IMG/VR virus record: IMGVR_UViG_3300017987_000001
Location: 1-64,000 of that record
Strand: one strand, 5' to 3'
Length of the DNA: 64,000 nucleotides
A program made the position numbers and the translations under genes. Positions within the stretch are counted from its first letter, which is position 1. Each line of letters begins with the position of its first letter. This document shows, one piece after another, positions 327 to 48,137 of this stretch. The notes beneath the pieces were generated by a model, which was given only the letters and a program-made list of their open reading frames with translations, made no database searches and was not told where the DNA came from.

Positions 327-404
327 TGGTAGGGAGGAAGGGACTTGAACCCCCAACCTGCGGATTATGATTCCGCCGCTCTGTACCAGTTGAGCTACCT
401 CCCC
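327..404 (-). tRNA. tRNA with CAT anticodon (elongator Met or Ile2)
   Basis: Cloverleaf: acceptor GGGGAGG/CCTCCCT, anticodon arm GCGGA-ATCATAA-TCCGC, T-loop TTCAAGT, encoded CCA. Confidence 0.9.
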
Positions 405-405
405 A

Positions 406-479
406 TGGCGGGCCAGCGAGGATTCGAACCCCGAAAGGTGGATTTGGAATCCACTGGTTTACCGTTAGCCTACTGACCC
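406..479 (-). tRNA. tRNA-Trp(CCA)
   Basis: Anticodon arm GTGGA-TTCCAAA-TCCAC, T-loop TTCGAAT, acceptor GGGTCAG/CTGGCCC, G73, CCA. Confidence 0.93.
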
Positions 480-535
480 GACCTTCTCAAATTACGCGTG
501 AACCACCGTTCCAGCCAACCGCGTTGGCGGCGGGA

Positions 536-775
536 CTAATAGTCCTCCGCGTCGTCTTCCTTCTCCTGACTTGCGAGCCTCATCTGATTCACCTTGTTCG
601 TCGCGCGAAGCTCGGTGATCGTGTGCTTCTTCTGGCAGTCCGGGCACACGGTCGTGCAGTCATACTGCAGCCAGCCCTTCGGCGTGCGTCGGCCGCCACT
701 GTACGACTGCTCGTGCTCGTGAACCTCTTCCTTCTTGCAGAAGTCGCACTTGATCTTCGTCGAGACGATATGCAT
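536..775 (-). CDS. small zinc-ribbon protein
   Basis: ATG after GAAAGGA SD; CDFC...CPDC. Confidence 0.6.
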   Translation of the reverse strand: MHIVSTKIKCDFCKKEEVHEHEQSYSGGRRTPKGWLQYDCTTVCPDCQKKHTITELRATNKVNQMRLASQEKEDDAEDY

Positions 776-789
776 CTCGTTCCTTTCGA

Positions 790-876
790 TGGCGGAGGGA
801 GCGGGACTCGAACCCGCGAGGGCTGTTAACCCCACCCGCCTTCCAAGCGGGCGCCTTGCCGCTAGACTACCCCTCC
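790..876 (-). tRNA. tRNA-Ser(GGA)
   Basis: Anticodon arm CCCGC-TTGGAAG-GCGGG, long variable arm, TTCGAGT T-loop, G73, CCA. Confidence 0.93.
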
Positions 877-1079
877 ACTCTCAGCTCCTTGATGATCTGG
901 AGATGCTGGTCCACGCTGTACGCTCCAGCATCCGCCAGTCTCTTCGCCACCTTCTCCATAAAGGCCCGCGTATGCGGTCCTTTGAATCGGCTCGGGCACG
1001 CTTCGAGCGACTTCTCGTATACAAGCCCACACGCCAGACATCTCACCATGTTGTGAACTCGCATTTGGGTCGCTATCAC
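867..1079 (-). CDS. small hypothetical protein; stop codon lies inside the 5' end of tRNA-Ser(GGA)
   Basis: GGAGG SD, GTGA coupling with upstream ORF, CLAC motif. Confidence 0.55.
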   Translation of the reverse strand: MIATQMRVHNMVRCLACGLVYEKSLEACPSRFKGPHTRAFMEKVAKRLADAGAYSVDQHLQIIKELRVEG

Positions 1080-1420
1080 GCCTCCTGAACCTCAAGCTCC
1101 AGCTCGAATTTCTCACGTCCTGTTGCCGAGATCTTCCTCGGTTCGCGCTTCTGCTTCAGCGAGCGCCACTTCGAAATGTCGTGCTTGAAGAAGCCCAACG
1201 ACGTCTGCGAAGTGCCGAGCGTTCCGTCTTCCTTCACGAAACGATACATGAACGACGTATGATGTCCCGGTCGTTGCGCCACGCCCACCACCTGTACGAG
1301 GCGCGGATACAATCCGTTGGGCGGCGCGTAGATGTAGCGCTGTCCGATATCGATCAGCTCGTCCGGAATGTACGGCATCGCTTTCACGAGAATCGACAGC
1401 TGCCGTGACGTAAGTACCAA
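1076..1420 (-). CDS. hypothetical protein
   Basis: TTG start after GAAAGGAG SD just downstream of tRNA-Ser(TGA). Confidence 0.55.
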   Translation of the reverse strand: MVLTSRQLSILVKAMPYIPDELIDIGQRYIYAPPNGLYPRLVQVVGVAQRPGHHTSFMYRFVKEDGTLGTSQTSLGFFKHDISKWRSLKQKREPRKISATGREKFELELEVQEA

Positions 1421-1433
1421 GCTTCTCCTTTCG

Positions 1434-1521
1434 TGGCGGCAGGCGGAGGACACGATCCCCACACCCGTAGGTGCCATCGGCTTTCAAAACCGCGCCGGTA
1501 CGCCTGTCCGGTTCACCTGCC
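1434..1521 (-). tRNA. tRNA-Ser(TGA), atypical T-loop
   Basis: Acceptor GGCAGGT/GCCTGCC, anticodon loop TTTGAAA, long variable arm, T-loop ATCGTGT, G73, CCA. Confidence 0.8.
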
Positions 1522-1523
1522 TG

Positions 1524-1610
1524 TGGCGGCGAGCGAGGGATTCGAACCCCCAAGAGTGATTAGCTCCACCCGCATTCGAAACGGGCGCCTTACCGTTAGA
1601 CTAGCTCGCC
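1524..1610 (-). tRNA. tRNA-Ser(CGA)
   Basis: Anticodon arm CCCGT-TTCGAAT-GCGGG, long variable arm, canonical T arm, CCA. Confidence 0.92.
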
Positions 1611-1703
1611 AATCCTGACGACTATGTACATCATCACATGGATTCCGATCCAGATCATCGGGATCCAGAACTCTCCGGCCTCCCTCAGTTCGTCGTCGGT
1701 CAT
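1596..1703 (-). CDS. 35-aa single-TM peptide; stop inside tRNA-Ser(CGA)
   Basis: MTDDELREAGEFWIPMIWIGIHVMMYIVVRIGELV, GAGGAG SD. Confidence 0.4.
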   Translation of the reverse strand: MTDDELREAGEFWIPMIWIGIHVMMYIVVRIGELV

Positions 1704-1715
1704 GTGTCTCTCCTC

Positions 1716-1789
1716 TCCGGGCGGCGGGACTTGAACCCACAACCGGCGGATTAAAAATCCGCTGCTCTCCCAATTGAGCGTACGCCCGG
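1716..1789 (-). tRNA. tRNA-Lys(TTT), CCA not encoded
   Basis: Acceptor CCGGGCG/CGCCCGG, anticodon arm GCGGA-TTTTTAA-TCCGC, TTCAAGT T-loop. Confidence 0.88.
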
Positions 1790-2053
1790 TTACGCCTCTG
1801 CGTCTGCCACCGCCATCTCGGCGCGACTCGCTGCGGCCATCGCGTCGTCGAGCGAGGTTGCGGCGTCATCACTCAGGTCGGCCATGCGCTTGAGCTTACT
1901 CTTGAGTGTCTCTGCCGCCTCAAGCTTCTCGCGCATCTCGCCGATCTTCTCCTCCAGTTGTGCCACTGCGTCTTCTGCGTCCGCCGCGATCTCCTGCGCC
2001 CGATCGAGCGCGGTATTGAGATCCGTCGTATCGAAGTCGATGTTGATCTGCAT
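1790..2053 (-). CDS. small coiled-coil protein
   Basis: MQINIDF start with GAGGA SD; A/E/K heptads. Confidence 0.65.
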   Translation of the reverse strand: MQINIDFDTTDLNTALDRAQEIAADAEDAVAQLEEKIGEMREKLEAAETLKSKLKRMADLSDDAATSLDDAMAAASRAEMAVADAEA

Positions 2054-2065
2054 CAATTCCTCTCG

Positions 2066-2155
2066 TGGCGGAGAGCCGGGGACTTGAACCCCGAAGCCAT
2101 CAAAGATGACCGGCAGATTAGCAATCTGCTGCCTTACCAATTAGGCAAGCTCTCC
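2066..2155 (-). tRNA. tRNA-Ser(GCT)
   Basis: Anticodon arm GCAGA-TTGCTAA-TCTGC, long variable arm, TTCAAGT, G73, CCA. Confidence 0.93.
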
Positions 2156-5068: not shown

Positions 5069-5851
5069 CTAGCACGATACGGAATTCAGCAGGTACGTGA
5101 GCAACGCCTTCGCGTACAGCCTCCGGCGGCCCTTGACCAGCTCCTTGGTGGCATCGTCGGCGTCGTCGGGGATGACCAGCATCGCCCGGCCGACCCACGG
5201 GAAGCCGCTGAGGACCATGTTGTTGCCGCGCACGATCCCGCTCATGCGTCCGGTGAGCCCGTCGCCGCGCCAGATGAACGCGACCTTGATGCCGCTCGGC
5301 TCCGGCACGTCGACGCCGTTCAGCAGCTCGAACGCGATGCTCGACGGTGCCGACATCGTCGACGCTGACACCGGAAGCACCTCGCGGATGAAGCAGTCGA
5401 CCCACGCCGTGAACTTCTTGGTGCTGGTGTAGACGTCTTCATGGTTGTTCCGGTTGATGTGGTTGGCCGCCGCCGTCATGTACTTGGTGACGATCTCGTC
5501 GAACGCCGCCAGCACGCCCTCGTTGATCGACTGCGAGAGTTCCGCGCTGTAATTCTCGTGGAGGCGCTCGTACATCCATTCGTTCGCTTGGGCCATCTTC
5601 ACGGCGCCCTCGCCGAACTTCTCGATGAGGAGCTTATCGACCTCGGCGCGAATGATCTTCTTGCGCGTACCGGCCGGAAGGAGATTCTGCGCCGTGTGAT
5701 TCAGCGCACCGATCCCTTCGTTGATCTGCTCCTCGATCGCGTCCAAGGTCGCGGTTGCCGGATCGATCGGCGGCGCCTCGGTCGTCTGATTCTGTGGCTG
5801 TTCCTGTTCCGTCTCGGTGCCGCTCGGAGCGGCGAATCCTGCTTCTGCCAT
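5069..5851 (-). CDS. hypothetical protein (N-terminal AGFAAP motif)
   Basis: 260-aa ORF with phage-like codon usage, located between sbcD and sbcC. Confidence 0.75.
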   Translation of the reverse strand: MAEAGFAAPSGTETEQEQPQNQTTEAPPIDPATATLDAIEEQINEGIGALNHTAQNLLPAGTRKKIIRAEVDKLLIEKFGEGAVKMAQANEWMYERLHENYSAELSQSINEGVLAAFDEIVTKYMTAAANHINRNNHEDVYTSTKKFTAWVDCFIREVLPVSASTMSAPSSIAFELLNGVDVPEPSGIKVAFIWRGDGLTGRMSGIVRGNNMVLSGFPWVGRAMLVIPDDADDATKELVKGRRRLYAKALLTYLLNSVSC

Positions 5852-28762: not shown

Positions 28763-29425
28763 CTACATCGTCGTGGTGCTGAGACCACACTGGGGGCATG
28801 TCGCTTCAGATGGTAACCTCGGAGCCTGACAGTGAGCGCACTTGATGACCTTGACCTTCACTTCCTCAAGCGTGTCACCTGCGTCAGGCAGTAACTGGAA
28901 CAGTTCTTGGTCGGGTACGAGGATGGGCTTCAGCGCCTTCCGCGCGTTGCCGGACAACTGATCGGCCTTCGCGTGCAACGGGTTGCTGTTGCGCGGAACC
29001 CACCGCCAGCGGATTCGGTACCCGCGCGTCTCGTACCAATCCACGACGGTCCACAAGTCCAAGTTGGCCTTACGTCCGTATTCGCGGGAGCCGCACTTGA
29101 TCGTGTACTCCGAGTCGGAGAAGACCCAGACACGGTACGGCGGATCCTTCACGGATTCGCTGAGCAACTTGTAGTAGTGGTAGCTGAGCGCCTCAGTATA
29201 CGCCGTCAGCTCCATCCTGTTCACGGTTGAGTGCGACCGTCCGCCAATGACGACTGCACGCGCGTGAAGCCGTCTATCGACTAGGAACGCTGAATACCCT
29301 CCCGCGCCCTTCCAGTCCAGCCCACTGCCGTCTCCGAAGAGCAGGAGATCCCACTGTGAGAGCGGGATCTCCTGACTCTTCAGGAAAGCGGCAAGCGGCA
29401 TCTCAGGCGAGGTTTTCTGAGTCAT
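28763..29425 (-). CDS. rnhA: ribonuclease HI with C-terminal zinc ribbon
   Basis: FGDGS, TVNRMEL, SDSEY, KANLDLW, WRWVP, ADQLS; CAHC...CPQC. Confidence 0.9.
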   Translation of the reverse strand: MTQKTSPEMPLAAFLKSQEIPLSQWDLLLFGDGSGLDWKGAGGYSAFLVDRRLHARAVVIGGRSHSTVNRMELTAYTEALSYHYYKLLSESVKDPPYRVWVFSDSEYTIKCGSREYGRKANLDLWTVVDWYETRGYRIRWRWVPRNSNPLHAKADQLSGNARKALKPILVPDQELFQLLPDAGDTLEEVKVKVIKCAHCQAPRLPSEATCPQCGLSTTTM

Positions 29426-30170
29426 GCAGTACGTCGCCGGACAGGATATTGAGCAGCGTATCCCGATTCGGGCGCATCCCTCTCAGCCATCTGGTGAATG
29501 TGCCGACCACCAGTCCTGCGGCAATGTTCGCGCAGTAGATGGTCGACTTCGCGGTACAGGACTGCTGCAGCCCCTCGCCCTCACTGAAGAGCGTGCGCTC
29601 GTAGTAGTCCCGCTCGTCCGTGGCACTCACGGCGAGCACGCGCGCGATTTCGGAAGCCATGCGCGAGTCGATGAACAGGGCGTTGCTGTTGCCCTTGAAC
29701 TTCTCCGCGTACGCCTCCCATATTTCCTTCCGAACCTCCATCTTGTCAACAGCGGATATCACGACGAACCGCTGCGGCTCGGGCGGATCCTCTCCGTCCT
29801 CGACCGGCTCCGGCTCCTCGATCTTGATGTTCGAGATCATCTCGGGCCGGAACTTGTTCTTGGAGGTCTTGAGCGTGACCGCGCTGTTGATCTGGAGACA
29901 CGCCTCGGCCACGGCTTCGACCTTCAGCTTGCCCAGATCGGACTCGATGAATCCCTGAACGGCGAGGTTCTCGACGTCCACGGTGTCGAAGTCGACGATG
30001 CGGATGTTCTCGACACCGATGTGTGCCAGCTGCTTTGCGACGAGCGAGCCGATTGCGCCAACGCCGATCAGCGTGACGCTGGCCGACGCGACCTTCTCCG
30101 GCTTGATGATGTCGCGGTGCCGAATCGCGCGATTGCTAAGGTCCGGCGAATCCGGCGGCGTCGTCGTCAT
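29403..30170 (-). CDS. E1-like ThiF adenylyltransferase
   Basis: GVGAIG nucleotide loop, VDFDTVDVENL..QG, SAVD, IDSRM, SCTAKSTIYC; start could be as far upstream as 30269. Confidence 0.9.
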   Translation of the reverse strand: MTTTPPDSPDLSNRAIRHRDIIKPEKVASASVTLIGVGAIGSLVAKQLAHIGVENIRIVDFDTVDVENLAVQGFIESDLGKLKVEAVAEACLQINSAVTLKTSKNKFRPEMISNIKIEEPEPVEDGEDPPEPQRFVVISAVDKMEVRKEIWEAYAEKFKGNSNALFIDSRMASEIARVLAVSATDERDYYERTLFSEGEGLQQSCTAKSTIYCANIAAGLVVGTFTRWLRGMRPNRDTLLNILSGDVLHDSENLA

Positions 30171-31917
30171 CTCCGAGTTCGACGAGTCCTCCGGTTCTGA
30201 CGGTGTACTCTGCTGTAGCGTGCTCTCCAGCAGTGACTGCGTCTCCTCCATCGTCTGCTCTTGCGGCAAGCTCCGCCTCCACTTCCTTGCGAACTTCGCT
30301 GATGGTGATTACGTCAGTGTCGCGGCGGGCGAGCGCGGCGTCCGTTACGTCCGCTTTCTTCTCGTCTGCCGTCTTGGTGGCGTCATCGGGTTCCGCGAAA
30401 CCGGGCGCCCCGTTCGACCCCGAGCTGCATGTTGCTGCGGATACGGCTCCCGTCGCGCCGGTTTCGGCCTTCTTCTCGGACTTGTTCGCGTCCTTCGGAT
30501 TGCCCAGACACAGTTCGAGGTCTGCGGCTTCCTCGTCCTCGCGCAGGTCGATGATGTGCCCCACATTGGTGAGACGGGTGATCTTCAGCGGAGCGTACTC
30601 GCCATCGACGAATCGCCATGTGATCTCGCCGTATGCGACCGGCGATTCGGTGGCGATATCGCACAGGCTGTCGATGTCGTCCTCTTCCGAGGCATACACG
30701 TCGATGCCTTCGGCGTACTCGTACCACCCGAAGTCGGTGATGACGATGGTGCCGTTCTTGTAGCGCTCGATCTGCCAGATCTGCTCTACGCTTTCGCTGA
30801 CGAGCTTCTGCGCAGGATCATCTTCACCAGACGCGAGACGATGGCGCCCACCCCAGTCAGGAATCTCCTCCTGATCGAAGATGGAGCGGGAAGCGACGCG
30901 ACGGCGGGCGGACGAAAAGGACGAATCCGAGTTCGCCGGTGTCTTGGTCTCGAATCCCTCCGTCCCCTCATTGTCGCCACGATTCCACTGGTTGCGCCAC
31001 TCGCGCCAGTCCTGCTCGTCCATGTAGTGGCCGTAGTGCCTGCCACCGTAGTTGTCGTAGCAGCCGCCGTAGCTTCCGCCGCCGTGAACCGTGACGGACG
31101 AGCCGGACGTGTACGAGCGCGTGAGGATGTTCGCCTGATACTCCTCCTCCCACGCCTCGTAGTCCTCCTGCGTCACGCCGAGGAACGGCGGGTTGATGTC
31201 CAGCTGCACCTTCAGATCGGCCTCTCGACCTCCGCCGAAGACTTCGCCGACAATACCCTGCTCTTGGATGTTGTAGCGGAACTTGGCCTTGAACTCCCCG
31301 CCCTTCGCGAGGATGGCCATGATCGACCAGTCGCTCCCACCGAACACGTCGCGGAACGTAGCCACGTCCGTGCTGCTGGGACTGGCCGAGTTGCCCGGAT
31401 GCGTGTGCAACCAGATCCGGAGCACCTCCGACGGGTGCCATCCGACCTTGACCATGTCGTCGAGGTACTTGTTCAGCGCATCGTCGTCGAACTCGACCGA
31501 CGCGGCGCTCGCCTTCTGCTTGATGGTCAGGAAGTCGGCCACGTACAGAAGCTCGCTGCGATAGCTGAGGCCGAAACCGCTGATCTCGGTGGATCCCCGG
31601 TCCCTGAACCACTGCAGCTTCGCGTATGCTCGCGGACCGAGACGCAATGCGCCCGGAACGTTCGGGCGCGTGGCAACCTCCTTGCGCTCCGGCGTCTTCC
31701 ACGAGCTGATGGCCGAGTGCTGGCTCGCTGCGGAGCCACTGCTTCCACGCGACGTCTGCGCTGCGGCAGACGGTGTCGACGCGGACGAATTCGCCGGTAC
31801 GCTTGACCGCCCCTGATTGGGGTGGCCAAGCGTCGGCGTGTTACCGGCAAATCCTGCGGACGGGTTACTGATGATATTCTCCTCTCGTCGCCTTCTTCGA
31901 CGCCTTCGCCTACCCAT
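30136..31917 (-). CDS. JAB/MPN (JAMM) isopeptidase with long disordered extensions
   Basis: TEISGFG catalytic Glu; WLHTHPGNSASPSSTD (HxH-x7-S-x2-D); ATG overlaps the E2 stop. Confidence 0.88.
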   Translation of the reverse strand: MGRRRRRRRRREENIISNPSAGFAGNTPTLGHPNQGRSSVPANSSASTPSAAAQTSRGSSGSAASQHSAISSWKTPERKEVATRPNVPGALRLGPRAYAKLQWFRDRGSTEISGFGLSYRSELLYVADFLTIKQKASAASVEFDDDALNKYLDDMVKVGWHPSEVLRIWLHTHPGNSASPSSTDVATFRDVFGGSDWSIMAILAKGGEFKAKFRYNIQEQGIVGEVFGGGREADLKVQLDINPPFLGVTQEDYEAWEEEYQANILTRSYTSGSSVTVHGGGSYGGCYDNYGGRHYGHYMDEQDWREWRNQWNRGDNEGTEGFETKTPANSDSSFSSARRRVASRSIFDQEEIPDWGGRHRLASGEDDPAQKLVSESVEQIWQIERYKNGTIVITDFGWYEYAEGIDVYASEEDDIDSLCDIATESPVAYGEITWRFVDGEYAPLKITRLTNVGHIIDLREDEEAADLELCLGNPKDANKSEKKAETGATGAVSAATCSSGSNGAPGFAEPDDATKTADEKKADVTDAALARRDTDVITISEVRKEVEAELAARADDGGDAVTAGEHATAEYTVRTGGLVELGDDDDAAGFAGP

Positions 31918-33649
31918 TGTTGTCGGCCGGAGGCCCGAAGCCTGTTCCTGCGTTTGCGCCCGGATCGATCGCGCCGATGTACTGCGGTGCTTCGCTGCTC
32001 GGCAGCTCTTCATAGCGACCGTTTGCGCCCAGCCGTCGCAGCATATGACCGTACGCACACTGGCGCGTGGGGTCTTCGCAGCACGGCTCGTTGTCGTTGA
32101 CGGCGTTTTCGAGACAGCCAGCACAGAAGTACACGTCGCTGCAGTCGTACATCTCGTTTACGTCGAACGACTCACTGCACGTCGCGCACATGCGCGTGCC
32201 GGTTGGTGCTGCGATCAGTGTTTCTACGTTGAAGTTCAGCGGGTTGACCTCATCCTGCGGGATCGTCGGGATCGAGTCGATCGTGATTCCCCGTCGCGGT
32301 GGGATGTTCACGTAGTTCGGGTGATTGGAATCCTCACCCCGCCCGGTCTCGGGCTGCTCGGGCGGCGCGAAACCGGTACCGGCTTCGTTGCGCGCCTGAT
32401 TCTGCTGCGCCCGCTGCGTGATCTCGCGATGCCATGGATGACGCGTGGCGGCAAGCCAGTTGCCAAGCGGACAGTACTGCGAGAAGTCTGCGCAGCATGT
32501 TCTGCGATCGTCCGCACGCCGCTGCACACACGCCGTGCAGCGCCATACGCTACGACACTGAATCGCATCATGTGCGTTCACGCTCGTGCCGCACTCCCCG
32601 CATTCTATGGATTCGCGAATTGCACAACCGGTCGTGCCGAACCCGTCACAGTCCTCGCAGCCCTCGTTGCGCATATCTTCGTCGGTGCGGCAGTTGCCAC
32701 AGATCGACACGTCGCCGATATCGCAGTAGTGCGAACAGTCGCGACACACCGCGTTCTCGCAGACCGCGCACGTGTACATGTCGTCCGGGTAGCCGCGATG
32801 GCCACAAACGATACACGTGTGCGTGCGCCGGTGATTTGCAGGCGGGGGCGCCGTGCCCACATTTGGGTTACGCCGCTTGAACTCCTTCGCGAAGTACTCC
32901 AGTCGCAGGAACGGCGACCTGTGGTTGTACGTTCGAAGTACCTGATCGATGAGGATGAAGAAGGTGAACAGGTCGCCTCGCTTCAGTGCATCGCCGATCT
33001 GCAGCTCGCCGTCGCCCTCGCACATCGACGCGTCCCGCACGTGCGGGTGACAGATCGTTGAGTGATCGGGAGCCAATAGTGGGGTCTCGGCGTAGACGCG
33101 GTACGGGCGCACCACGCCACGCAAGACCTGATTCATGTTCAGCTTGACCATGTACCGGCCGAACTCGACATTGAGTTGATTAACCTCACAGTAGAGTGCA
33201 ACCGGACGGGTGAGCACGACGAGGTACCAGCCGTCGATCGAACGCTCCATCCTCCAACCGTCGAAATCGCCGGTCAGCCGCTGAAGCATTCGCGTCATGC
33301 TGGTCTTTGTGATCGGAGTCAGCTGCTTATCGTCCTTGTTGTCCGTCTTTGTGATCGTCCGACGACATGACTCGACCTGATTCTGCAGGAACGCGTGATG
33401 ATTGCGCAGAAGCGTCAACCAGTCACGGATCTCGTCGAGAAGCACGCACGCCGAGTTGACCTCACCTTTCCCGGTGTAGAGAAAATCTGCGCGGTCGCAG
33501 ATCGCCATGTACTCTTGGCTCTCCTCCACGAGGGACTGAATCATAACCTTGAGGTCTTCTGGGCGACGGGCGTTCCTGCGGCGCAGCACATCCTGCAGAA
33601 TTTCCGCAGCTTGTGCCGTGTCCGTCAGTGTCTCCATCGTTTCAGACAA
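31910..33649 (-). CDS. E2-like (UBC fold) conjugating protein with C-terminal Cys-rich zinc domains
   Basis: HPHV-x4-MCEGDG (HPH plus catalytic Cys), L.TYN..SP; many downstream CxxC; TTG start after GGAGG. Confidence 0.75.
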   Translation of the reverse strand: MSETMETLTDTAQAAEILQDVLRRRNARRPEDLKVMIQSLVEESQEYMAICDRADFLYTGKGEVNSACVLLDEIRDWLTLLRNHHAFLQNQVESCRRTITKTDNKDDKQLTPITKTSMTRMLQRLTGDFDGWRMERSIDGWYLVVLTRPVALYCEVNQLNVEFGRYMVKLNMNQVLRGVVRPYRVYAETPLLAPDHSTICHPHVRDASMCEGDGELQIGDALKRGDLFTFFILIDQVLRTYNHRSPFLRLEYFAKEFKRRNPNVGTAPPPANHRRTHTCIVCGHRGYPDDMYTCAVCENAVCRDCSHYCDIGDVSICGNCRTDEDMRNEGCEDCDGFGTTGCAIRESIECGECGTSVNAHDAIQCRSVWRCTACVQRRADDRRTCCADFSQYCPLGNWLAATRHPWHREITQRAQQNQARNEAGTGFAPPEQPETGRGEDSNHPNYVNIPPRRGITIDSIPTIPQDEVNPLNFNVETLIAAPTGTRMCATCSESFDVNEMYDCSDVYFCAGCLENAVNDNEPCCEDPTRQCAYGHMLRRLGANGRYEELPSSEAPQYIGAIDPGANAGTGFGPPADNNG

Positions 33650-33658
33650 GGTGCCTCC

Positions 33659-33707
33659 AAAAAAAGAAGAGAAGAGCGCCCGCCCGGCCGAAGCCGAGCG
33701 GGCGCCC
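33659..33707 (-). terminator. intrinsic terminator between the Ubl and E2 genes
   Basis: GGGCGCCCGCTCGGC-TTCG-GCCGGGCGGGCGCTC hairpin followed by TTCTCTTCTTTTTTT. Confidence 0.7.
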
Positions 33708-33737
33708 TGTACACATCAGACGACGTGCGTCAGACGA

Positions 33738-34046
33738 CTAACCCGCGAAGCCGGGGAGGTCCGCTCCCGCGACCTTGTGCGGGCTGATGGTGACCCTGTC
33801 ACCGTCCTGCAGGACGAAGTCGGCGGGCATCCGGCCGCCCGTGAACCGCTCGCAGCGGATCACGTACTTGGCCGGATCCTGCGTGCCCATGTGGCGCTCC
33901 CAGAGCGTCTTGACGGTGGAGCCTGCGGGCAGCGAGACGAAGTCCGCGAAGCCCGTGTCGGAGGTGGACGTCAGGAAGATGCGCATCTCGCCTTCGGGAG
34001 CCGGGGCCATCTCGGGGGCGGCGGGGGTCTCGTTCTGATCGGTCAC
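33738..34046 (-). CDS. ubiquitin-like beta-grasp protein (ThiS/MoaD-like) with C-terminal extension
   Basis: MRIFL...GSTVK.L...Y.IR...DFVLQDGDRVTISPHKVAGA-DLPGFAG; GTG after GAAAGG. Confidence 0.85.
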   Translation of the reverse strand: MTDQNETPAAPEMAPAPEGEMRIFLTSTSDTGFADFVSLPAGSTVKTLWERHMGTQDPAKYVIRCERFTGGRMPADFVLQDGDRVTISPHKVAGADLPGFAG

Positions 34047-34104: not shown

Positions 34105-35502
34105 TTACGGCATAAACGGGGAATTGAGGCGGTCCTTCTTGACGATAATCGTCTTACCCCACGGAACGATGCTCCGTTCAAACTCGTCCGTGGTCATACA
34201 GTCCTCGGGCAACAACCACAGTGTGGGGAAGCCGTCTGGACTCTTGTCGGGACGGGACGCGGTATACGTGTCCCACCATGACTGGCCGCGCTCTTTCAGG
34301 ATGTTTGCCTTGTACGTGGCGATGGTACCGTAGCCGTCCGTGTAACCGACTATGTAGTGTGGCCTCGGGTGCATTTGTCGAATATGCATGAGGGCACTAC
34401 TGTAGTCGGTCCCACCGCGTCCAAAGAATCGCTCAAGTGGTTCGCCCGGGCGATATGGGTGAACCTTCGCGACACGCGCGTCACTCTGTACGACAGTGAT
34501 CGTCGCGCCCCGCGCACACATGCCCCGAAGTTCGGGGTCAACGAGCTTGAGTTCTTCTGCTCCCATGGACCCGCTGGTATCGATCAAGAATGCTACGCGC
34601 AATCCGCCGGTCCACGTATAGCCGCGATACGCTGGATGGCGCCGCGACGGTCGTCTACGTGTTTCGGTCCGGATCTGATGACTGTGCTGGGTTTCCATAG
34701 CGCGCAAGTGTCTGTACCACGGAACTACCGCGTCCCGCTTGGACGCCTTCATGAGTTGCTCGTGATCAGCACCGAGAGTGCCGCGCCATTTCTTGTGCAC
34801 CTCATCGCCGAACATCTTGAGTGCTTCGGACACCGACGTGATGATGTTCCTCGTGCGTTCGTCTGCGAACGTACCGTCGCTCTCACTGAGGCGGAGCACC
34901 TCACTCATGAGATACGGTACGTTCTTGCCCGGGAATCCATCCGACTGACCTGCAGTGCCAGTCGACAAGGCGGAGTTGGGTGACTGGAATTTCGGAAGCT
35001 TCAGCTTGCCTTCATTGACGAGCGTCTGGATGACTTCTGCATACTGCATTGACGTCATGCCCATCGGCACGCCCTGAAGGTGCTGTAATTGAAAACCTAC
35101 CAACCCCTCTTGCGACAAGTGCGGACTGGGATGCTTCTGGTTGACGTAGACGTCCATCGCTGCGGTTGCGATCTCTGGACCGAATCGATCAATCAGGAAT
35201 CTCCCATAGCTGGTGAAGTGCCCCTCAATGATGTGTGCTGCCTGATGTTCGAGGACTTCCAGCCGTGCTTCGAAGCTCAGCTCCTTCATAATTGGCCAGT
35301 ACAGCGTGATCTGCAATTGGCCATCGACGACGTCACAGCCCGCGTGAATCGGATAGGATCCACTGTAGCCGATCGGTGCCGATGTAGCGACGATATTGAC
35401 GTTGTGCAGGACGTAGCACAGGTCATGCCTCTTCGTCGTTACGAGATAGTAGAGGAGTTCGCTGAGCCAGTTACCGTCACCGCTGTGCTGCTCTGCGTCC
35501 AC
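34105..35502 (-). CDS. DUF2201-type metallopeptidase-like plus vWA domain protein
   Basis: LEHQAAH (degenerate HExxH), RRPSRR, IDTSGSM MIDAS, GRGGTD, TDGYG. Confidence 0.85.
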   Translation of the reverse strand: MDAEQHSGDGNWLSELLYYLVTTKRHDLCYVLHNVNIVATSAPIGYSGSYPIHAGCDVVDGQLQITLYWPIMKELSFEARLEVLEHQAAHIIEGHFTSYGRFLIDRFGPEIATAAMDVYVNQKHPSPHLSQEGLVGFQLQHLQGVPMGMTSMQYAEVIQTLVNEGKLKLPKFQSPNSALSTGTAGQSDGFPGKNVPYLMSEVLRLSESDGTFADERTRNIITSVSEALKMFGDEVHKKWRGTLGADHEQLMKASKRDAVVPWYRHLRAMETQHSHQIRTETRRRPSRRHPAYRGYTWTGGLRVAFLIDTSGSMGAEELKLVDPELRGMCARGATITVVQSDARVAKVHPYRPGEPLERFFGRGGTDYSSALMHIRQMHPRPHYIVGYTDGYGTIATYKANILKERGQSWWDTYTASRPDKSPDGFPTLWLLPEDCMTTDEFERSIVPWGKTIIVKKDRLNSPFMP

Positions 35503-36734
35503 TAGCCGAGTACCTTCTCGAACTTCTTGACGAAGTCGTGGTACACTTTGCCCATCTGCGCGACGACATCCGATTTCTTGAAGACGTCCATGATCGGACT
35601 GCGCACGAATCTGGGCGCGCGATACACCGCATCGCACAACGACGATACGATGTCCGCAGCGTTGTTCAGCATCAGCACCTGACAGAAGCCGGTGAATCGC
35701 TCTCCCGCTTCCGGGTACTGGGTCGTGAACGTGTTGTCGGACTGTGCGATCACGCGAATCACATCGAGCTGCGTCGCACCAATGTATCCGCGTGCCTTGG
35801 TCCCACCACTGAACCAGCGCTGAACACGCTCTAGTTGCGCCGCGAACTGCTCCACGCTACTTCCGAGCAGCTCACGACCGAGAATAGGCACCTTGTCCGG
35901 CTGGTACCCACTCTGAAGGAACGTCAGCAACGGTGGCGAGATCGTATCGTCAATGACCGCTCGTGCGCTCTTGACGATGTTCGCGGCCGATTCGCCAGCG
36001 GCCCGTTGCGCCTCGACATGCACCGCCAACCCCATCCAACCACGCGGTGTGAGCTGGTTGAAGAAGCTGTCGTGGTTGAGGATGAACTGGTAGACCGTCG
36101 GCTTCATGATGATCGACCAGACGGCCAGCAGTTCAGCCTTCTCCGGTACGACGATGTACGGGTGCAGTCGTTCTTCGATCGAGTGGCACAGCTCGGCCTC
36201 AACCGTCGTGTAGTCGGCGGTCAGTGGGTTGCCGGTTGCCACGAGGATGCAGTTGGGGCTTACCTCGCGGTTATTGAACTTGGCCTTTCCCGCCGTCGAG
36301 TCGACGATCTGTCGCAGCTGGTTGAGCACCTTCTTGCTGGCCGTGGGAAGCTCGCTGATCTCCAGCAGCAGCGCTTCCTGTTCGAAGATCGGAAGCATCG
36401 CAGCTTCCATGTTCTCGGTGACCTTCTTGGTGGTCCCGTCCGGATTCGTGACAATCTTGCCCGCTGGGTCGGGAACGCCAAGGTTGTCATCGAAGAGTTG
36501 TGCGTCGGGATCCCAGCGACAGTACGGTATGCCGAGGTCGTCGGCGATGCACGTACACGTTGTCGACTTACCGTCTCCCGACTCACTGAGCATGATCGGG
36601 ATCTTGTTCACCCGTTCGCGCTTCGGCTGGCTCAGCAGGTACTTCGCGTGATTCGTGATCGCTCGGCGAGCGAACCCGAGGCTCACTTGGTACTTGTTCT
36701 GCTGATTCCAGACCGTCGTGAGCAGCCTGCCCAT
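35502..36734 (-). CDS. MoxR-like AAA+ ATPase
   Basis: Walker A SESGDGKST, atypical Walker B LLEISE, VATGNP sensor 1, arginine finger EERL; partner of the vWA gene. Confidence 0.8.
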   Translation of the reverse strand: MGRLLTTVWNQQNKYQVSLGFARRAITNHAKYLLSQPKRERVNKIPIMLSESGDGKSTTCTCIADDLGIPYCRWDPDAQLFDDNLGVPDPAGKIVTNPDGTTKKVTENMEAAMLPIFEQEALLLEISELPTASKKVLNQLRQIVDSTAGKAKFNNREVSPNCILVATGNPLTADYTTVEAELCHSIEERLHPYIVVPEKAELLAVWSIIMKPTVYQFILNHDSFFNQLTPRGWMGLAVHVEAQRAAGESAANIVKSARAVIDDTISPPLLTFLQSGYQPDKVPILGRELLGSSVEQFAAQLERVQRWFSGGTKARGYIGATQLDVIRVIAQSDNTFTTQYPEAGERFTGFCQVLMLNNAADIVSSLCDAVYRAPRFVRSPIMDVFKKSDVVAQMGKVYHDFVKKFEKVLG

Positions 36735-46469: not shown

Positions 46470-48137
46470 CTACATTTTAGCCGTCAGCTTGTCCAGATCA
46501 ATGGCCTTGATCTGATCGAGCCAGTAATCGGCTGCACGTCCGGCGCTCCAGTCACCGATGTACGTGAAGACCTGATCGGAGAAGCCGCCGATCTGGTACA
46601 CGTCCGGATGATTCTCCGGCATCTGGTTGCTGGTGTTGGCGTACACGTTAATGTTCACCAACTGCGCCTTCGGGTTGCGCTTCTTGTAAGCCGCCCACGC
46701 CGTGGCCATCCCAGTGGCTCGGGAGCCATAGATGGATCCGAACTCGGCGTACGGCGTCTCGACCCACGCCTCGTTGTCCGAGACGTAGATCACCAGATTG
46801 CCCTTGTGCTTCTGGGCGTTCAGGTGCTTCAGCGCGACGGAGCAGTCCGTGCCTCCACCATGGAGCGCCAACTTGCGCGCGTTGGTCATGACCGAATCGC
46901 GCGGGTTGGCGGCAACCCGATGCACGCGCGTGTCGAACGGTACGATCGTCGTGGCGTCCGGGTTCTTGCGCAGCAGCGACGCTGCGACAAGCCCGGCCAC
47001 ATCCACGGCGAGCACCTTCGACGTTGCGCCTCCGCGCATGCCCGTGACAGGCCACGTCATCGATCCGCTCGTGTCAATGCAGACCGCGACGTTACCTTCG
47101 ATCGCCGGAACGTTCTCGCACGCGACTTCCATCGCGTCCTGTAGGGCGTTCGTGATCTTGGTCGGCGCCGAGCCTTCGTTCATCTTGAAGGCCATGAGGA
47201 TCTGGTACGGGAAGACCCGCGCCTTCCGGATCACGTCCGGGTCGCGCAGCTTCGCCGCGATCAGATCCACCATCGCAGGGTCGTTGTAGACCCCGTGACG
47301 GAGCGCCGTCTGCAGGTTCATCCTGCAGAAGTGCCAGCCGCCCTTCTTGAACAGTTCGCCCCATTCCGCCGTCGTCAGCGGGGAGGGGAGGCCGTCGAGC
47401 CGCTGGAACGGAACGGCCGGTACTTCCATGGCCAGTCCGCTCTCGGGCATCTTCGCACCGTTCGCAACCACCTGCTTCATGGCCTTGAACGCTTCGAACT
47501 GCTGAACCAGCTCGGGCAGCTGACTCAGATACTTCGACACCGGATCCCCGTCCTTCTTCAGGAAGTACCTGTAGATGGCCGAGTGCTGCGGCGTCGCGGG
47601 CTTCGGGTGCATCATCGTGATGACGTCCTTCATGGACGGCTTCCCGATGTCCCATCTGAAGAGCATCTCCGGGGACGTCCGGTCGAGCATCTGCTGGAGC
47701 AGACGTCGCGGACGGTGACCGATGTTGTCGCGACCGGTCACGTTGCTCCAGAGGATCTCGAAGAACCTCAGGAACATCTTCCCATTGTCGATGATCTTCG
47801 GGAACGCCTTCTCCAGATGGCGCATTCCCTCATTTCCGAGAGTCGTGAGGTAGCACGCCAGCAACGCTGGCATGTCCTTCATGTACCCTCGCTGACGGGC
47901 GAAGACTGCGATCTTCGCCACTAGTTCAGCTGAGACCTTCGGGAGCAATCCCACGATGGCCTTCAGCTGGTCCTCGGCTGAGCTGTAGTACGCATCACCG
48001 AACGTGCACGTCGCAGCCATCTGCGCCAGTGCCAGTTCGGGCGACAATGCGTACGCAGCTCCCCCAGCCTCGTTGGCTGCGGTTGCCGCCGGTGCAGCGA
48101 ACCCACCTCGCTGCGATCGAAAGACTCGGTTACTCAT
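46470..48137 (-). CDS. rsr: Ro60/Rsr TROVE-domain RNA-binding protein with vWA domain
   Basis: NEAGG.AY, RQRGYMKDMPA, HPKP, RMNL, ARVFPYQ, IDTSGSM, GGGTDCS, SDNE. Confidence 0.93.
   Translation of the reverse strand: MSNRVFRSQRGGFAAPAATAANEAGGAAYALSPELALAQMAATCTFGDAYYSSAEDQLKAIVGLLPKVSAELVAKIAVFARQRGYMKDMPALLACYLTTLGNEGMRHLEKAFPKIIDNGKMFLRFFEILWSNVTGRDNIGHRPRRLLQQMLDRTSPEMLFRWDIGKPSMKDVITMMHPKPATPQHSAIYRYFLKKDGDPVSKYLSQLPELVQQFEAFKAMKQVVANGAKMPESGLAMEVPAVPFQRLDGLPSPLTTAEWGELFKKGGWHFCRMNLQTALRHGVYNDPAMVDLIAAKLRDPDVIRKARVFPYQILMAFKMNEGSAPTKITNALQDAMEVACENVPAIEGNVAVCIDTSGSMTWPVTGMRGGATSKVLAVDVAGLVAASLLRKNPDATTIVPFDTRVHRVAANPRDSVMTNARKLALHGGGTDCSVALKHLNAQKHKGNLVIYVSDNEAWVETPYAEFGSIYGSRATGMATAWAAYKKRNPKAQLVNINVYANTSNQMPENHPDVYQIGGFSDQVFTYIGDWSAGRAADYWLDQIKAIDLDKLTAKM

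What the first reader, a model, noticed from the sequence alone, without database searches (positions are those of the whole stretch)
30136..34046. Shared xGF[A/G] linear motif in the disordered tails of Ubl-pathway proteins
Seen: Ubl ends LPGFAG*; the E2-like protein has AGTGFAPP and ends AGTGFGPPADNNG*; JAB has SAGFAGN and APGFAEP and ends AAGFAGP*. The same motif opens the protein between sbcD and sbcC (MAEAGFAAP, 5851) and Ro60 (RGGFAAP, 48137). Each copy lies in low-complexity sequence outside the folded domains, and the codons differ. Inference: a docking signal that gathers these proteins on a common scaffold or condensate (FG-like), or a recognition tag for the AAA+/vWA pair. In the Ubl it sits in the propeptide JAB would remove, so it could couple localisation to maturation.
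Basis: partly seen in the sequence, partly recalled or inferred. Interest (0 to 1): 0.7.

Follow-up and report, generated by a model that had tools for sequence, protein, structure and literature searches.

The report
Conserved GF docking motif, phage Ubl operon
Three neighbouring proteins of a giant phage's ubiquitin-like tagging system (the tag precursor, the E2-like enzyme and the JAB protease) carry a short Gly-Phe motif in their floppy tails far more often than chance allows, and related phages keep it; it looks like a docking signal, but its binding partner is still unknown.

Summary
[APTGS]GF[AG] occurs 8 times in their 1,274 residues, against 0.25-0.43 expected (0 of 5,000 composition-preserving shuffles). 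Seven disordered copies exist in all: one in the Ubl tail, two in E2 and four in JAB.

The copies in E2 and JAB lie in AlphaFold segments with pLDDT below 50, and their codons differ. Related phage operons with 38-58% identical JAB proteins, one at only 47% GC, keep the motif as islands in otherwise unconserved linkers. In those loci it occurs only in these three proteins.

Ubl homologues all share ...K[VI]xG-A followed by a variable tail. The Ubl copy therefore sits in a propeptide, but one subclade lacks it.

Outside the three proteins the proteome count is at chance (13 against about 10). The Ro60 copy sits where bacterial Ro60 proteins have RG[LM]FTPK. The sbcD/sbcC-intergenic protein has no homologues to test.

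My best reading is a lineage-specific short linear docking motif of the Ubl cascade, working like LIR, SIM or UFIM motifs in eukaryotes. The receptor is unresolved: the one complex prediction gave no answer. Condensate and AAA+/vWA-tag ideas remain untested.

The parts
33738..34046 (-). Ubl precursor gene (102 aa). The predicted mature end is Gly94 (codon 33765-33767), followed by an 8-residue propeptide.
   Evidence: Sits between the vWA and E2 genes in a conserved operon. The close homologues share ...TPHK[VI]xG-A followed by a variable tail. The beta-grasp fold was not shown here: only weak MoaD/ThiS leads and no Pfam hit.
33741..33758 (-). GF motif copy in the Ubl propeptide (LPGFAG-stop).
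   Evidence: [PA]GF is kept in the propeptides of L001, L002 and L006, and is absent where the propeptide is a single Ala (L004, L015, L026, L028).
31910..33649 (-). E2-like protein (579 aa): coiled coil, UBC-like core with HPH...C (33020-33049), then Cys-rich RING/FYVE-like zinc fingers.
   Evidence: AF2 mean pLDDT 79. The top Foldseek PDB hits are almost all E2 enzymes, but weakly (E 0.05-0.4). H, P and C are invariant in 84 homologues. Weak RING/FYVE matches. No Pfam, PHROG or PADLOC family.
32360..32383 (-). GF motif copy, E2 linker (AGTGFAPP).
   Evidence: Starts the pLDDT<50 segment 420-480 of the model. Conserved as TGFAP in L001 and P0140.
31928..31951 (-). GF motif copy, E2 C-terminal tail (AGTGFGPP).
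   Evidence: Lies in the pLDDT<50 segment 550-575. [TAG]GF[GA]P[PA] is conserved in L001, L004, L006, L026, P0140, P0143 and P0144.
30136..31917 (-). JAB/JAMM metalloprotease (593 aa): polybasic N-terminus, JAMM domain (residues 85-266, HxHx7Sx2D at 31366-31407), second beta-rich domain (360-455), and four disordered linkers or tails.
   Evidence: VIA-align Z 14.1 to Pyrococcus JAMM1, and Z above 10 to Rpn11, Cap3 and the Bil DUB. E111, H171, H173, S181 and D184 are invariant. AF2 model.
31840..31860 (-). GF motif copy, JAB N-terminal region (SAGFAGN).
   Evidence: Lies in the pLDDT<50 segment 17-74. Kept only in L001/P0002 and, in variant form, P0010.
30952..30966 (-).
   Evidence: G and F are 100% conserved in 11 of 11 close homologues, while the flanks are 9-45%. 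pLDDT<50.
30388..30408 (-). GF motif copy, JAB C-terminal linker (APGFAEP).
   Evidence: The G and F columns are 91% and 82% conserved; the remainder reflects misalignment. pLDDT<50.
30139..30159 (-). GF motif copy at the JAB C-terminus (AAGFAGP-stop). Overlaps the 5' part of the E1 reading frame.
   Evidence: G and F are 100% conserved in 11 of 11. The terminal GP is conserved in the JAB frame, whereas the overlapping E1-frame residues vary.
29403..30251 (-). E1 (ThiF-type adenylating enzyme). No tail motif. The exact start is uncertain (ATG at 30251 or 30170).
   Evidence: Pfam ThiF 1.5e-26. PADLOC CBASS E1-E2 models down to 1e-15. Zero strict-motif hits in five loci.
34105..35502 (-). Zincin-like + vWA (DUF2201) protein. 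No tail motif. Candidate receptor, untested.
   Evidence: Pfam DUF2201 1.2e-10 and DUF2201_N. MIDAS motif DTSGS is conserved.
35502..36734 (-). AAA+-like ATPase. No tail motif.
   Evidence: PHROG 1297 'ATPase' 4.4e-8. No Pfam hit.
5825..5851 (-). Doubtful outlier copy: MAEAGFAAP at the start of ORF 5069-5851.
   Evidence: Present, but the protein has no homologue in 5.8 billion sequences, so conservation cannot be tested.
48090..48110 (-). Doubtful outlier copy: RGGFAAP at residues 10-16 of Ro60.
   Evidence: Kept in the two closest homologues, one of them on a syntenic contig. Bacterial Ro60 proteins have RG[LM]FTPK at the same place.

Best explanation
The GF element (consensus [T/A/P]-G-F-[A/G]-[P/G/x]-[P/A/x], often with an acidic residue 3-4 positions upstream) is a lineage-specific short linear docking motif of a phage-encoded ubiquitin-like conjugation cassette (AAA+, zincin-vWA, Ubl, E2-RING-like, JAB, E1).

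It sits in disordered tails of exactly the three proteins that must be brought together: the Ubl precursor, the E2-like enzyme and the JAB protease. It most likely tethers them to one folded partner of the same pathway. Precursor trimming, adenylation and transfer would then happen at high local concentration.

My first guess for the partner is the small ThiF-type E1. It is the only core enzyme without the motif, and I saw no sign of the extra E2-recruiting domain that canonical E1s have.

**Shown:** enrichment, location in disordered segments, conservation and specificity to the three proteins. **Inferred:** that the motif binds something, and what it binds.
For: - **Enrichment.** 8 copies against 0.25-0.43 expected in the three proteins, reached by 0 of 5,000 shuffles. 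The same holds in five diverged loci (3-8 against 0.2-0.6), while AAA+, vWA and E1 together carry 0-1.
- **Specificity.** In L002, L004 and L006, none of the 7-16 other called genes per locus has the motif.
- **Disorder.** All E2 and JAB tail copies lie in pLDDT<50 segments.
- **Islands of conservation.** GF columns average 0.80 identity, against 0.27 for the surrounding disordered residues and 0.63 for folded domains.
- **Protein-level selection.** Codons differ between copies, and the motif is retained in a 47% GC relative.
- **Positional plasticity, typical of short linear motifs.** E2 homologues P0147 and P0149 carry it at the N-terminus, and copy number varies from 1 to 3 in E2 and 2 to 4 in JAB.
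- **Phe usage.** 6 of the 9 Phe residues in the 352 disordered residues follow Gly.
- **Established knowledge (not tested here).** Non-canonical E1 systems recruit partners through disordered linear motifs. Examples are the UBA5 UFIM and UFC1-binding sequence, the ATG3 flexible region binding ATG7, and the LIRs of ATG4B and ATG3.
Against: - No receptor was found. The complex prediction of E1 + Ubl + vWA protein + E2 tail scored ipSAE 0.01, which the tool defines as no evidence either way.
- A more distant operon with the same six genes (L009) has no tail GF at all. The motif is therefore not needed for the core chemistry.
- The Ubl copy is missing in one subclade and the E2 tail copy is missing in L002.
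- AF2 did not dock any copy back onto JAB or E2 in cis. This is weak evidence, given shallow alignments.
Confidence: 0.55

Rival explanations
1. Ubl-interacting motif. The GF peptide binds the Ubl beta-grasp itself, working like LIR/AIM, SIM or UFIM motifs. E2 and JAB would use it to capture Ubl or poly-Ubl, and the copy in the propeptide would mask the Ubl's own groove until JAB trims it.
For: - The carriers are the two enzymes that must bind Ubl. JAB has 3-4 copies, as multivalent SIM proteins do.
- By analogy (my knowledge, not tested here), the ATG4B protease and the ATG3 E2 carry LIRs in disordered regions.
Against: - The core does not match LIR ([WFY]xx[LIV]) or SIM patterns: the position three residues after F is A, P, S or G and never L, I or V.
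- The complex run, which included mature Ubl, gave no signal (no evidence either way).
- Ubl proteins without a GF propeptide exist in the same clade.
Confidence: 0.2
2. Recognition tag for the AAA+/zincin-vWA pair. The vWA MIDAS site or the zincin-like cleft would bind the acidic-flanked GF peptide and deliver its clients to the ATPase.
For: - Every GF-positive operon seen (window, L001, L002, L004, L006, L015, L026, and the P0147 contig, which shows the vWA gene plus a truncated upstream gene) sits in the AAA+/vWA-type operon.
- The minimal Ubl-E2-JAB-E1 systems without these genes lack tail GF, apart from one copy in the L017 E2.
- Acidic residues are common 3-4 positions upstream of G.
- A zincin-like cleft is a natural peptide binder, and in the window its HExxH is HQAAH.
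Against: - L009 has AAA+ and vWA genes but no motif.
- The co-occurrence amounts to one phylogenetic event.
- The complex run, which included the vWA protein, gave no signal (no evidence either way).
Confidence: 0.15
3. Exosite or substrate-like determinant for JAB. The propeptide GF would help JAB recognise the precursor. The copies in E2 and JAB would then be pseudo-substrates that regulate the protease, or extra processing sites.
For: - In four Ubl proteins the motif lies 4-5 residues after the conserved cleavable Gly.
- JAB tails end in a conserved G-P, reminiscent of a Ubl end with a one-residue propeptide.
- The Bil JAB peptidase is known to pre-process its Ubl (PMC10557695).
Against: - Ubl proteins with a single-Ala or AAA propeptide show that JAB does not need GF.
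- The other copies are not preceded by a [VI]xG-A site.
- AF2 did not dock any of the four cis copies onto JAB's folded domains.
Confidence: 0.1
4. Cohesive FG-like stickers. The motifs would drive a condensate or target the three proteins to a larger scaffold outside the operon, such as the capsid interior, a phage compartment or a host factor.
For: - Several copies per protein lie in disordered regions.
- The stricter, post-hoc motif occurs 3 times against 0.35 expected elsewhere in the proteome: the 5851 protein, Ro60 and a 900-aa protein at genome positions 97779-100481.
Against: - There are only 2-4 copies per protein, with charged flanks.
- The loose motif is at chance outside the three proteins.
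- No other gene in related loci carries it.
- The Ro60 copy has an ordinary family explanation.
Confidence: 0.07
5. Chance product of G/A/P-rich low-complexity tails in a 60% GC genome.
For: The tails are rich in G, A and P, and the genome-wide loose-motif count outside the three proteins equals expectation.
Against: - 0 of 5,000 window-preserving shuffles reach the observed count.
- Five diverged loci repeat the enrichment.
- GF columns are 82-100% conserved within flanks averaging 27%.
- The motif is retained at 47% GC.
Confidence: 0.03

Closest known systems
LIR/AIM, UFIM and SIM motifs of eukaryotic Ubl cascades (ATG4B and ATG3 LIRs, UBA5 UFIM and UFC1-binding sequence, SIMs of RNF4 and SENP6/7). 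Recalled from my own knowledge, not tested here.
   Same: Short motifs in disordered tails of the protease, the E2 and other pathway enzymes. They are often multivalent, variable in position, and used for docking within the cascade.
   Different: - The sequence pattern is different: G-F-[A/G] followed by small residues or Pro, with no [WFY]xx[LIV] or hydrophobic-acidic SIM core.
- The host is a phage-encoded prokaryotic system.
- One copy sits in the Ubl's own propeptide.
- The receptor is unknown.
Bil (BilABCD) bacterial ubiquitination system and type II CBASS Cap2/Cap3
   Same: - ThiF-type E1, with PADLOC E1-E2 hits down to 1e-15.
- JAMM peptidase structurally close to Cap3 and the Bil DUB, with Z above 10.
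- A Ubl with a C-terminal Gly masked by an extension that a JAB would remove, as shown for BilC (PMC10557695).
   Different: - The system is encoded by a 208-kb phage next to its terminase gene.
- The E2 is a separate 579-aa protein with an HPH...C core and RING/FYVE-like fingers, not the CEHH-type BilB.
- The JAB is enlarged by a second domain and long tails.
- An AAA+ and zincin-vWA pair is present.
- No PADLOC model matches the E2, Ubl, vWA or AAA+ proteins.
- I found no description of tail motifs in these systems.
FG-repeat nucleoporin domains
   Same: Phe-Gly-type dipeptides in disordered sequence.
   Different: - The order here is G-F, not F-G.
- There are 2-4 copies instead of tens.
- The flanks are acidic.
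- Each copy is positionally conserved, unlike a repeat array.
PGF-CTERM archaeal sorting signal, and GYF-domain ligands (PPG[FILMV])
   Same: Several copies read PGF.
   Different: - No transmembrane helix or basic tail follows any copy, and the Ubl ends 2-4 residues after GF.
- PPG is absent from the collected copies.
- No GYF domain occurs in the phage genome; the best hit has E 0.05 and is below the cut-off.

Membership tests
Short linear motif (ELM-type docking motif) | Lies in intrinsically disordered sequence outside folded domains | tested here: met
   All six E2 and JAB tail copies lie in AF2 segments with pLDDT<50. The Ubl copy lies after the conserved terminal Gly.
Short linear motif (ELM-type docking motif) | A few fixed positions conserved as an island within fast-evolving flanks | tested here: met
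   GF columns average 0.80 identity, against 0.27 for the other disordered positions, in 11 JAB homologues. See also the position table from 54 collected copies.
Short linear motif (ELM-type docking motif) | More frequent than composition predicts | tested here: met
   8 against 0.25-0.43 expected, reached by 0 of 5,000 shuffles. Repeated in five loci.
Short linear motif (ELM-type docking motif) | A defined folded binding partner | tested here: inconclusive
   The complex prediction with E1, Ubl and the vWA protein scored 0.01, which the tool reports as 'no answer'. AAA+, the JAB domains and the E2 core were not tested in trans.
LIR/AIM motif | Core [W/F/Y]-x-x-[L/I/V] | tested here: not met
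   Three positions after F the residues are A, P, S, G, T or K, and never L, I or V, in 54 collected copies.
FG-repeat cohesive domain | Many FG dipeptides in a long, low-charge disordered domain | tested here: not met
   There are 1-4 GF copies per protein, with acidic flanks, and each is positionally conserved.
PGF-CTERM sorting signal | PGF followed by a transmembrane helix and a basic C-terminal cluster | tested here: not met
   The tails end 0-30 mostly polar residues after GF, and no hydrophobic helix follows.
Ubl precursor processed by a JAB peptidase (as in Bil) | Conserved C-terminal Gly followed by a variable extension | tested here: met
   Seven of eight Ubl homologues read ...K[VI]xG-A and then diverge in length and sequence; L010 ends ...NVSAG.
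Ubl precursor processed by a JAB peptidase (as in Bil) | Cleavage by the cognate JAB | not testable with these tools
   JAB has intact JAMM residues and a JAMM fold. Cleavage itself needs biochemistry.
Ubiquitin-like beta-grasp protein | Beta-grasp fold | tested here: inconclusive
   No Pfam hit. The PDB profile search finds MoaD only at E 0.58. The Atlas gives a ThiS lead at 0.88, below its reliability mark.
E2 (UBC-fold) conjugating enzyme | UBC fold with an HPN-like motif and a catalytic Cys 7-8 residues later | tested here: inconclusive
   Foldseek's top 34 PDB hits are all E2 or UFC1 enzymes, but with E 0.05-0.4 and TM up to 0.48. H, P and C are invariant in 84 homologues. No sequence family matches.
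JAB/JAMM metalloprotease | JAMM fold with E...HxH...S..D zinc site | tested here: met
   Z 14.1 to 5ld9 and Z above 10 to Rpn11, Cap3 and the Bil DUB. E111, H171, H173, S181 and D184 are invariant.

The most novel reading that the evidence does not exclude
The tail motifs are mimics of the Ubl's own surface segment. The folded Ubl of the GF-positive clade carries an invariant TGFA at the position I infer, from sequence only, to be the beta1-beta2 loop. That is the same tetrapeptide as the E2 tail motif TGF[A/G]P, whereas GF-negative relatives have GGG[F/Y]A there.

E2 and JAB tails, and the Ubl's own propeptide, would then act as pseudo-Ubl ligands. They would compete for the Ubl-binding pocket of E1 or JAB and so gate the cascade. 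The conserved G-P end of JAB would be a second, tail-type mimic. This would be a built-in autoregulatory mimicry circuit in a viral ubiquitin-like system.
Probability: 0.12. Interest if true: 0.85.

Novelty: new variant of a known kind. Interest (0 to 1): 0.6.

Why it matters
Docking by short linear motifs is central to eukaryotic ubiquitin-like cascades, but to my knowledge it has not been described for prokaryotic or viral ones. Here a phage-encoded cassette of Ubl, E2-RING-like, JAB and E1 with an AAA+/vWA pair offers a clean, conserved, experimentally tractable motif. It marks exactly the proteins that must meet.

Identifying its receptor would show how a minimal E1 without an obvious E2-recruiting domain organises its partners. 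It would also give a handle, through GF-to-AA mutants or competing peptides, for finding out what this uncharacterised phage system does during infection.

The operon itself, with an E2-like family of more than 700 members and no Pfam model, is also poorly charted.

Tried and rejected
- **DNA-level repeat or site.** Rejected. The codons differ between copies, and GGNTTYGSN shows no special strand or frame pattern beyond coding bias.
- **GC-driven composition artefact.** Rejected by the window shuffles and by retention in 47-48% GC relatives.
- **GYF-domain ligand.** One distant E2 homologue has a GYF_2 domain. The phage genome has no GYF domain, and PPG is absent from the collected motif copies.
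- **PGF-CTERM, LIR and SIM motifs.** Pattern tests failed.
- **Conservation of the JAB C-terminal copy as a side-effect of the overlapping E1 frame.** Rejected for the terminal G-P, because the E1-frame residues there vary (DLS, DRN or APS). It cannot be excluded for the window/L001 pair alone.
- **Conservation of the 5851 protein's copy.** There are no homologues to test.
- **Ro60 relatives in viral contigs.** None found. The protein search showed the family-wide RG[LM]FTPK segment instead.
- **Complex prediction.** No answer.
- **DNA search of the phage collection.** No match.
- **Literature.** The two searches that ran found no description of this phage operon or of tail motifs in Bil, Bub or CBASS systems.
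- **Second domain of JAB.** No convincing structural or Pfam match.


Full report
**Setting**

The window is the first 64 kb of a 207,857-bp virus record with direct terminal repeats, which the tool's table lists as 100% complete. All genes of the finding lie on the minus strand and form one cassette:
- an AAA+-like ATPase (35502-36734; PHROG 'ATPase' 4.4e-8);
- a zincin-like + vWA protein (34105-35502; Pfam DUF2201 and DUF2201_N);
- a roughly 100-aa putative Ubl (33738-34046);
- a 579-aa E2-like protein (31910-33649);
- a 593-aa JAB protein (30136-31917);
- a ThiF-type E1 (29403 to about 30251; Pfam 1.5e-26);
- an RNase H gene downstream.

The terminase gene lies just upstream, on the other strand.

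Assignments vary in strength:
- **JAB** is solid. VIA-align gives Z 14.1 to an archaeal JAMM, and Z above 10 to Rpn11, Cap3 and the Bil deubiquitinase. The E...HxH...S..D residues are invariant.
- **E1** is solid. It also matches the CBASS E1-E2 models.
- **E2** is plausible but not proven. Foldseek's best PDB hits are almost all E2 enzymes, but weak. An HP...C signature is invariant in 84 homologues. The Cys-rich part weakly resembles RING/FYVE fingers.
- **Ubl** rests on context and on its C-terminal pattern. Sequence searches gave only weak MoaD/ThiS leads.

**The observation**

I called 240 genes crudely (64,869 aa) and counted [APTGS]GF[AG]. There are 21 copies against about 10.3 expected from shuffles. 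Eight of the 21 lie in the 1,274 residues of Ubl + E2 + JAB, where 0.25-0.43 are expected. None of 5,000 shuffles reached 8, even when residues were shuffled only within 10- or 20-residue windows, which preserves the low-complexity composition.

The remaining proteome has 13 copies against 10.3 expected, which is chance.

Two of the eight hits are in folded parts: the JAMM 'EISGFG' element and the Ubl 'TGFAD' segment.

AlphaFold2 models put all four disordered JAB copies and both E2 copies in segments with pLDDT below 50. Within those 352 disordered residues, 6 of 9 Phe residues follow Gly.

**Conservation**

The same gene order occurs on metagenomic phage contigs:
- L001/L014 (JAB 51% identical);
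- L002/L003/L023/L024;
- L004/L005/L027/L028 and L015/L025;
- L006/L007/L021/L022;
- L026;
- the contig of P0147.

In each of five loci tested, the three proteins carry 3-8 copies against 0.2-0.6 expected. AAA+, vWA and E1 together carry 0-1. None of the other called genes in L002, L004 and L006 has any.

In an alignment of 11 JAB homologues (38-58% identical), three GF dipeptides are 82-100% conserved. The disordered segments around them average 27% identity to the window protein, and the folded domains 63%.

E2 tails keep [T/A/G]GF[G/A]P[P/A]. In P0147 and P0149 the motif has moved to the N-terminus.

Relatives with only 47-48% GC keep the motif, so it is not a by-product of GC richness.

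The consensus from 54 collected copies is [T/A/P]-G-F-[A/G]-[P/G]-[A/P], with frequent D or E three to four residues upstream. There are two flavours: TGF[A/G]P in E2, and [A/P]GF in JAB and the Ubl propeptide.

**The Ubl copy is in a propeptide**

Seven of the eight Ubl homologues share ...TP.K[VI]xG-A and then diverge; the eighth (L010) ends ...NVSAG. The tails after the Gly are:
- ADLPGFAG in the window;
- AEKPGFLKR in L001;
- AEVAGFAA in L002;
- AELPGFED in L006;
- a single A in L004;
- AAA in L008;
- a basic 14-residue tail in L009.

The reactive Gly is therefore residue 94, and the motif lies in the part a JAB peptidase would remove, as shown for BilC and BilA (PMC10557695).

However, the L004/L015/L026/L028 subclade has no GF in its one-residue propeptide while keeping the E2 and JAB copies. 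A link between motif and maturation therefore cannot be general.

**Limits of the family**

A more distant operon with the same six genes (L009) has no tail GF at all. Minimal Ubl-E2-JAB-E1 systems without AAA+/vWA (L008, L010, L016, L018, L019) also lack tail copies, and L017 has a single copy in its E2 tail.

The motif is thus an accessory feature of one clade, not part of the core chemistry. All GF-positive operons are of the AAA+/vWA type, but this amounts to a single phylogenetic event.

**The two outliers**

The protein between sbcD and sbcC has no homologue in 5.8 billion sequences, nor in viral contigs.

Ro60 does start at 48137, behind a strong Shine-Dalgarno sequence. Its two closest homologues, one on a syntenic contig, keep GF[A].P. 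But the same N-terminal position reads RG[LM]FTPK in more distant Ro60 homologues (a few carry Acidobacteria or Saprospiraceae labels) and RGK..PP in others. The resemblance therefore has an ordinary family explanation.

A stricter post-hoc pattern gives 3 copies against 0.35 expected outside the three proteins. That is suggestive at most.

**Mechanism**

The features shown are those of a short linear docking motif: enrichment, disorder, island-like conservation, multivalency, positional plasticity and restriction to three functionally linked proteins.

What it binds is inferred. I favour a partner inside the cassette. My first guess is the small ThiF-type E1. It is the only core enzyme lacking the motif. 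By analogy with UBA5 and ATG7 (my knowledge), such an E1 would need linear motifs to recruit its E2.

The alternatives are Ubl itself (LIR/SIM-like), the zincin-vWA/AAA+ pair, a JAB exosite, or a scaffold outside the operon.

The single complex prediction allowed combined E1, mature Ubl, the vWA protein and the E2 tail. It scored 0.01, and the tool says this is evidence neither for nor against binding. AF2 did not dock any copy in cis.

Pattern tests exclude LIR, SIM, PGF-CTERM and GYF-ligand membership. FG-repeat behaviour is unlikely, given 2-4 copies with acidic flanks.

**Verdict**

The extension to Ro60 and the 5851 protein is not supported.

The docking-signal reading is the best available, and the propeptide placement is right. 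The receptor, any condensate and any AAA+/vWA link remain untested.

I found no description of such tail motifs in prokaryotic or phage Ubl systems. I rate the finding as a new variant of a known kind, with interest 0.6.

Noticed in passing
window 30139-30144 (JAB C-terminus); P0001-P0012: JAB proteins of this family end in a conserved Gly-Pro-stop: 10 of the 11 close homologues, plus the more distant P0012. The stop overlaps the E1 reading frame, but the E1-frame residues there vary (DLS, DRN or APS). The G-P is therefore selected in the JAB frame. It resembles a Ubl end with a one-residue propeptide, or an uncleavable pseudo-substrate.
   Followed up: partly
window 33945-33956 (Ubl residues 31-34, TGFA); alignment A3: The folded Ubl has an invariant G-[F/Y]-A early in the domain. 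I infer from sequence only that this is the beta1-beta2 loop. It reads ETGFAD in all GF-positive loci and GGG[F/Y]A in GF-negative ones. TGFA is the same tetrapeptide as the E2 tail motif.
   Followed up: partly
window 31910-33649: The E2-like protein looks like an E2-E3 fusion: a long coiled coil, a UBC-like core with HPH...C, several CxxC pairs and a C-terminal module weakly RING-like (E 0.05). Its family has 733 members at E<=0.001 in the representative library. None of the nine members I scanned matches a Pfam family over this domain, and the window's copy matches no PHROG or PADLOC model.
   Followed up: partly
window 35233-35247 (vWA protein residues 86-90): The zincin motif HExxH of the DUF2201_N domain is HQAAH in the window but HExxH in all five relatives compared. 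The window's copy may be a catalytically dead peptide-binding domain. The MIDAS motif DTSGS is intact in all six.
   Followed up: partly
window 31885-31917 (JAB N-terminus): JAB starts with a polybasic run (MGRRRRRRRRR). Most close homologues keep it as MGR[RGK] followed by an R/K-rich stretch.
   Followed up: no
window about 30298-30324 (JAB residues about 532-540): A second conserved short element, [K/E/D]-T-[E/D]-[V/I]-[I/V], lies in the JAB C-terminal tail between the last two GF copies. AF2 models a helix (539-555) just after it.
   Followed up: no
window 31910-31915 (E2 C-terminus) and homologues: E2 C-termini end either in Gly (NG, SG or TG in the window, L001, P0140, P0141, L015 and L026) or in Phe (L004, L006, P0144).
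   Followed up: no
window 330-2155: A cluster of six tRNA genes on the minus strand (Rfam gathering hits). No Y RNA family reached threshold anywhere in the window, despite the Ro60 gene at 46470-48137.
   Followed up: no
window 29403-30269 against 30136-30269: The E1 open frame overlaps the JAB 3' end by 35 to 134 nt, depending on which start is used (ATG at 30170, ATG at 30251 or TTG at 30269). The conserved ThiF-type N-terminal element DLS.R.IR.RDII begins right at the JAB stop codon, so the short overlap is more likely.
   Followed up: partly
genome C1:97779-100481 (L012:780-3482, minus strand): A 900-aa protein with no Pfam or PHROG match carries GRGGFAGPG. It is the only other strict-motif copy in the genome, and it resembles the Ro60 copy (QRGGFAAPA).
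   Followed up: partly
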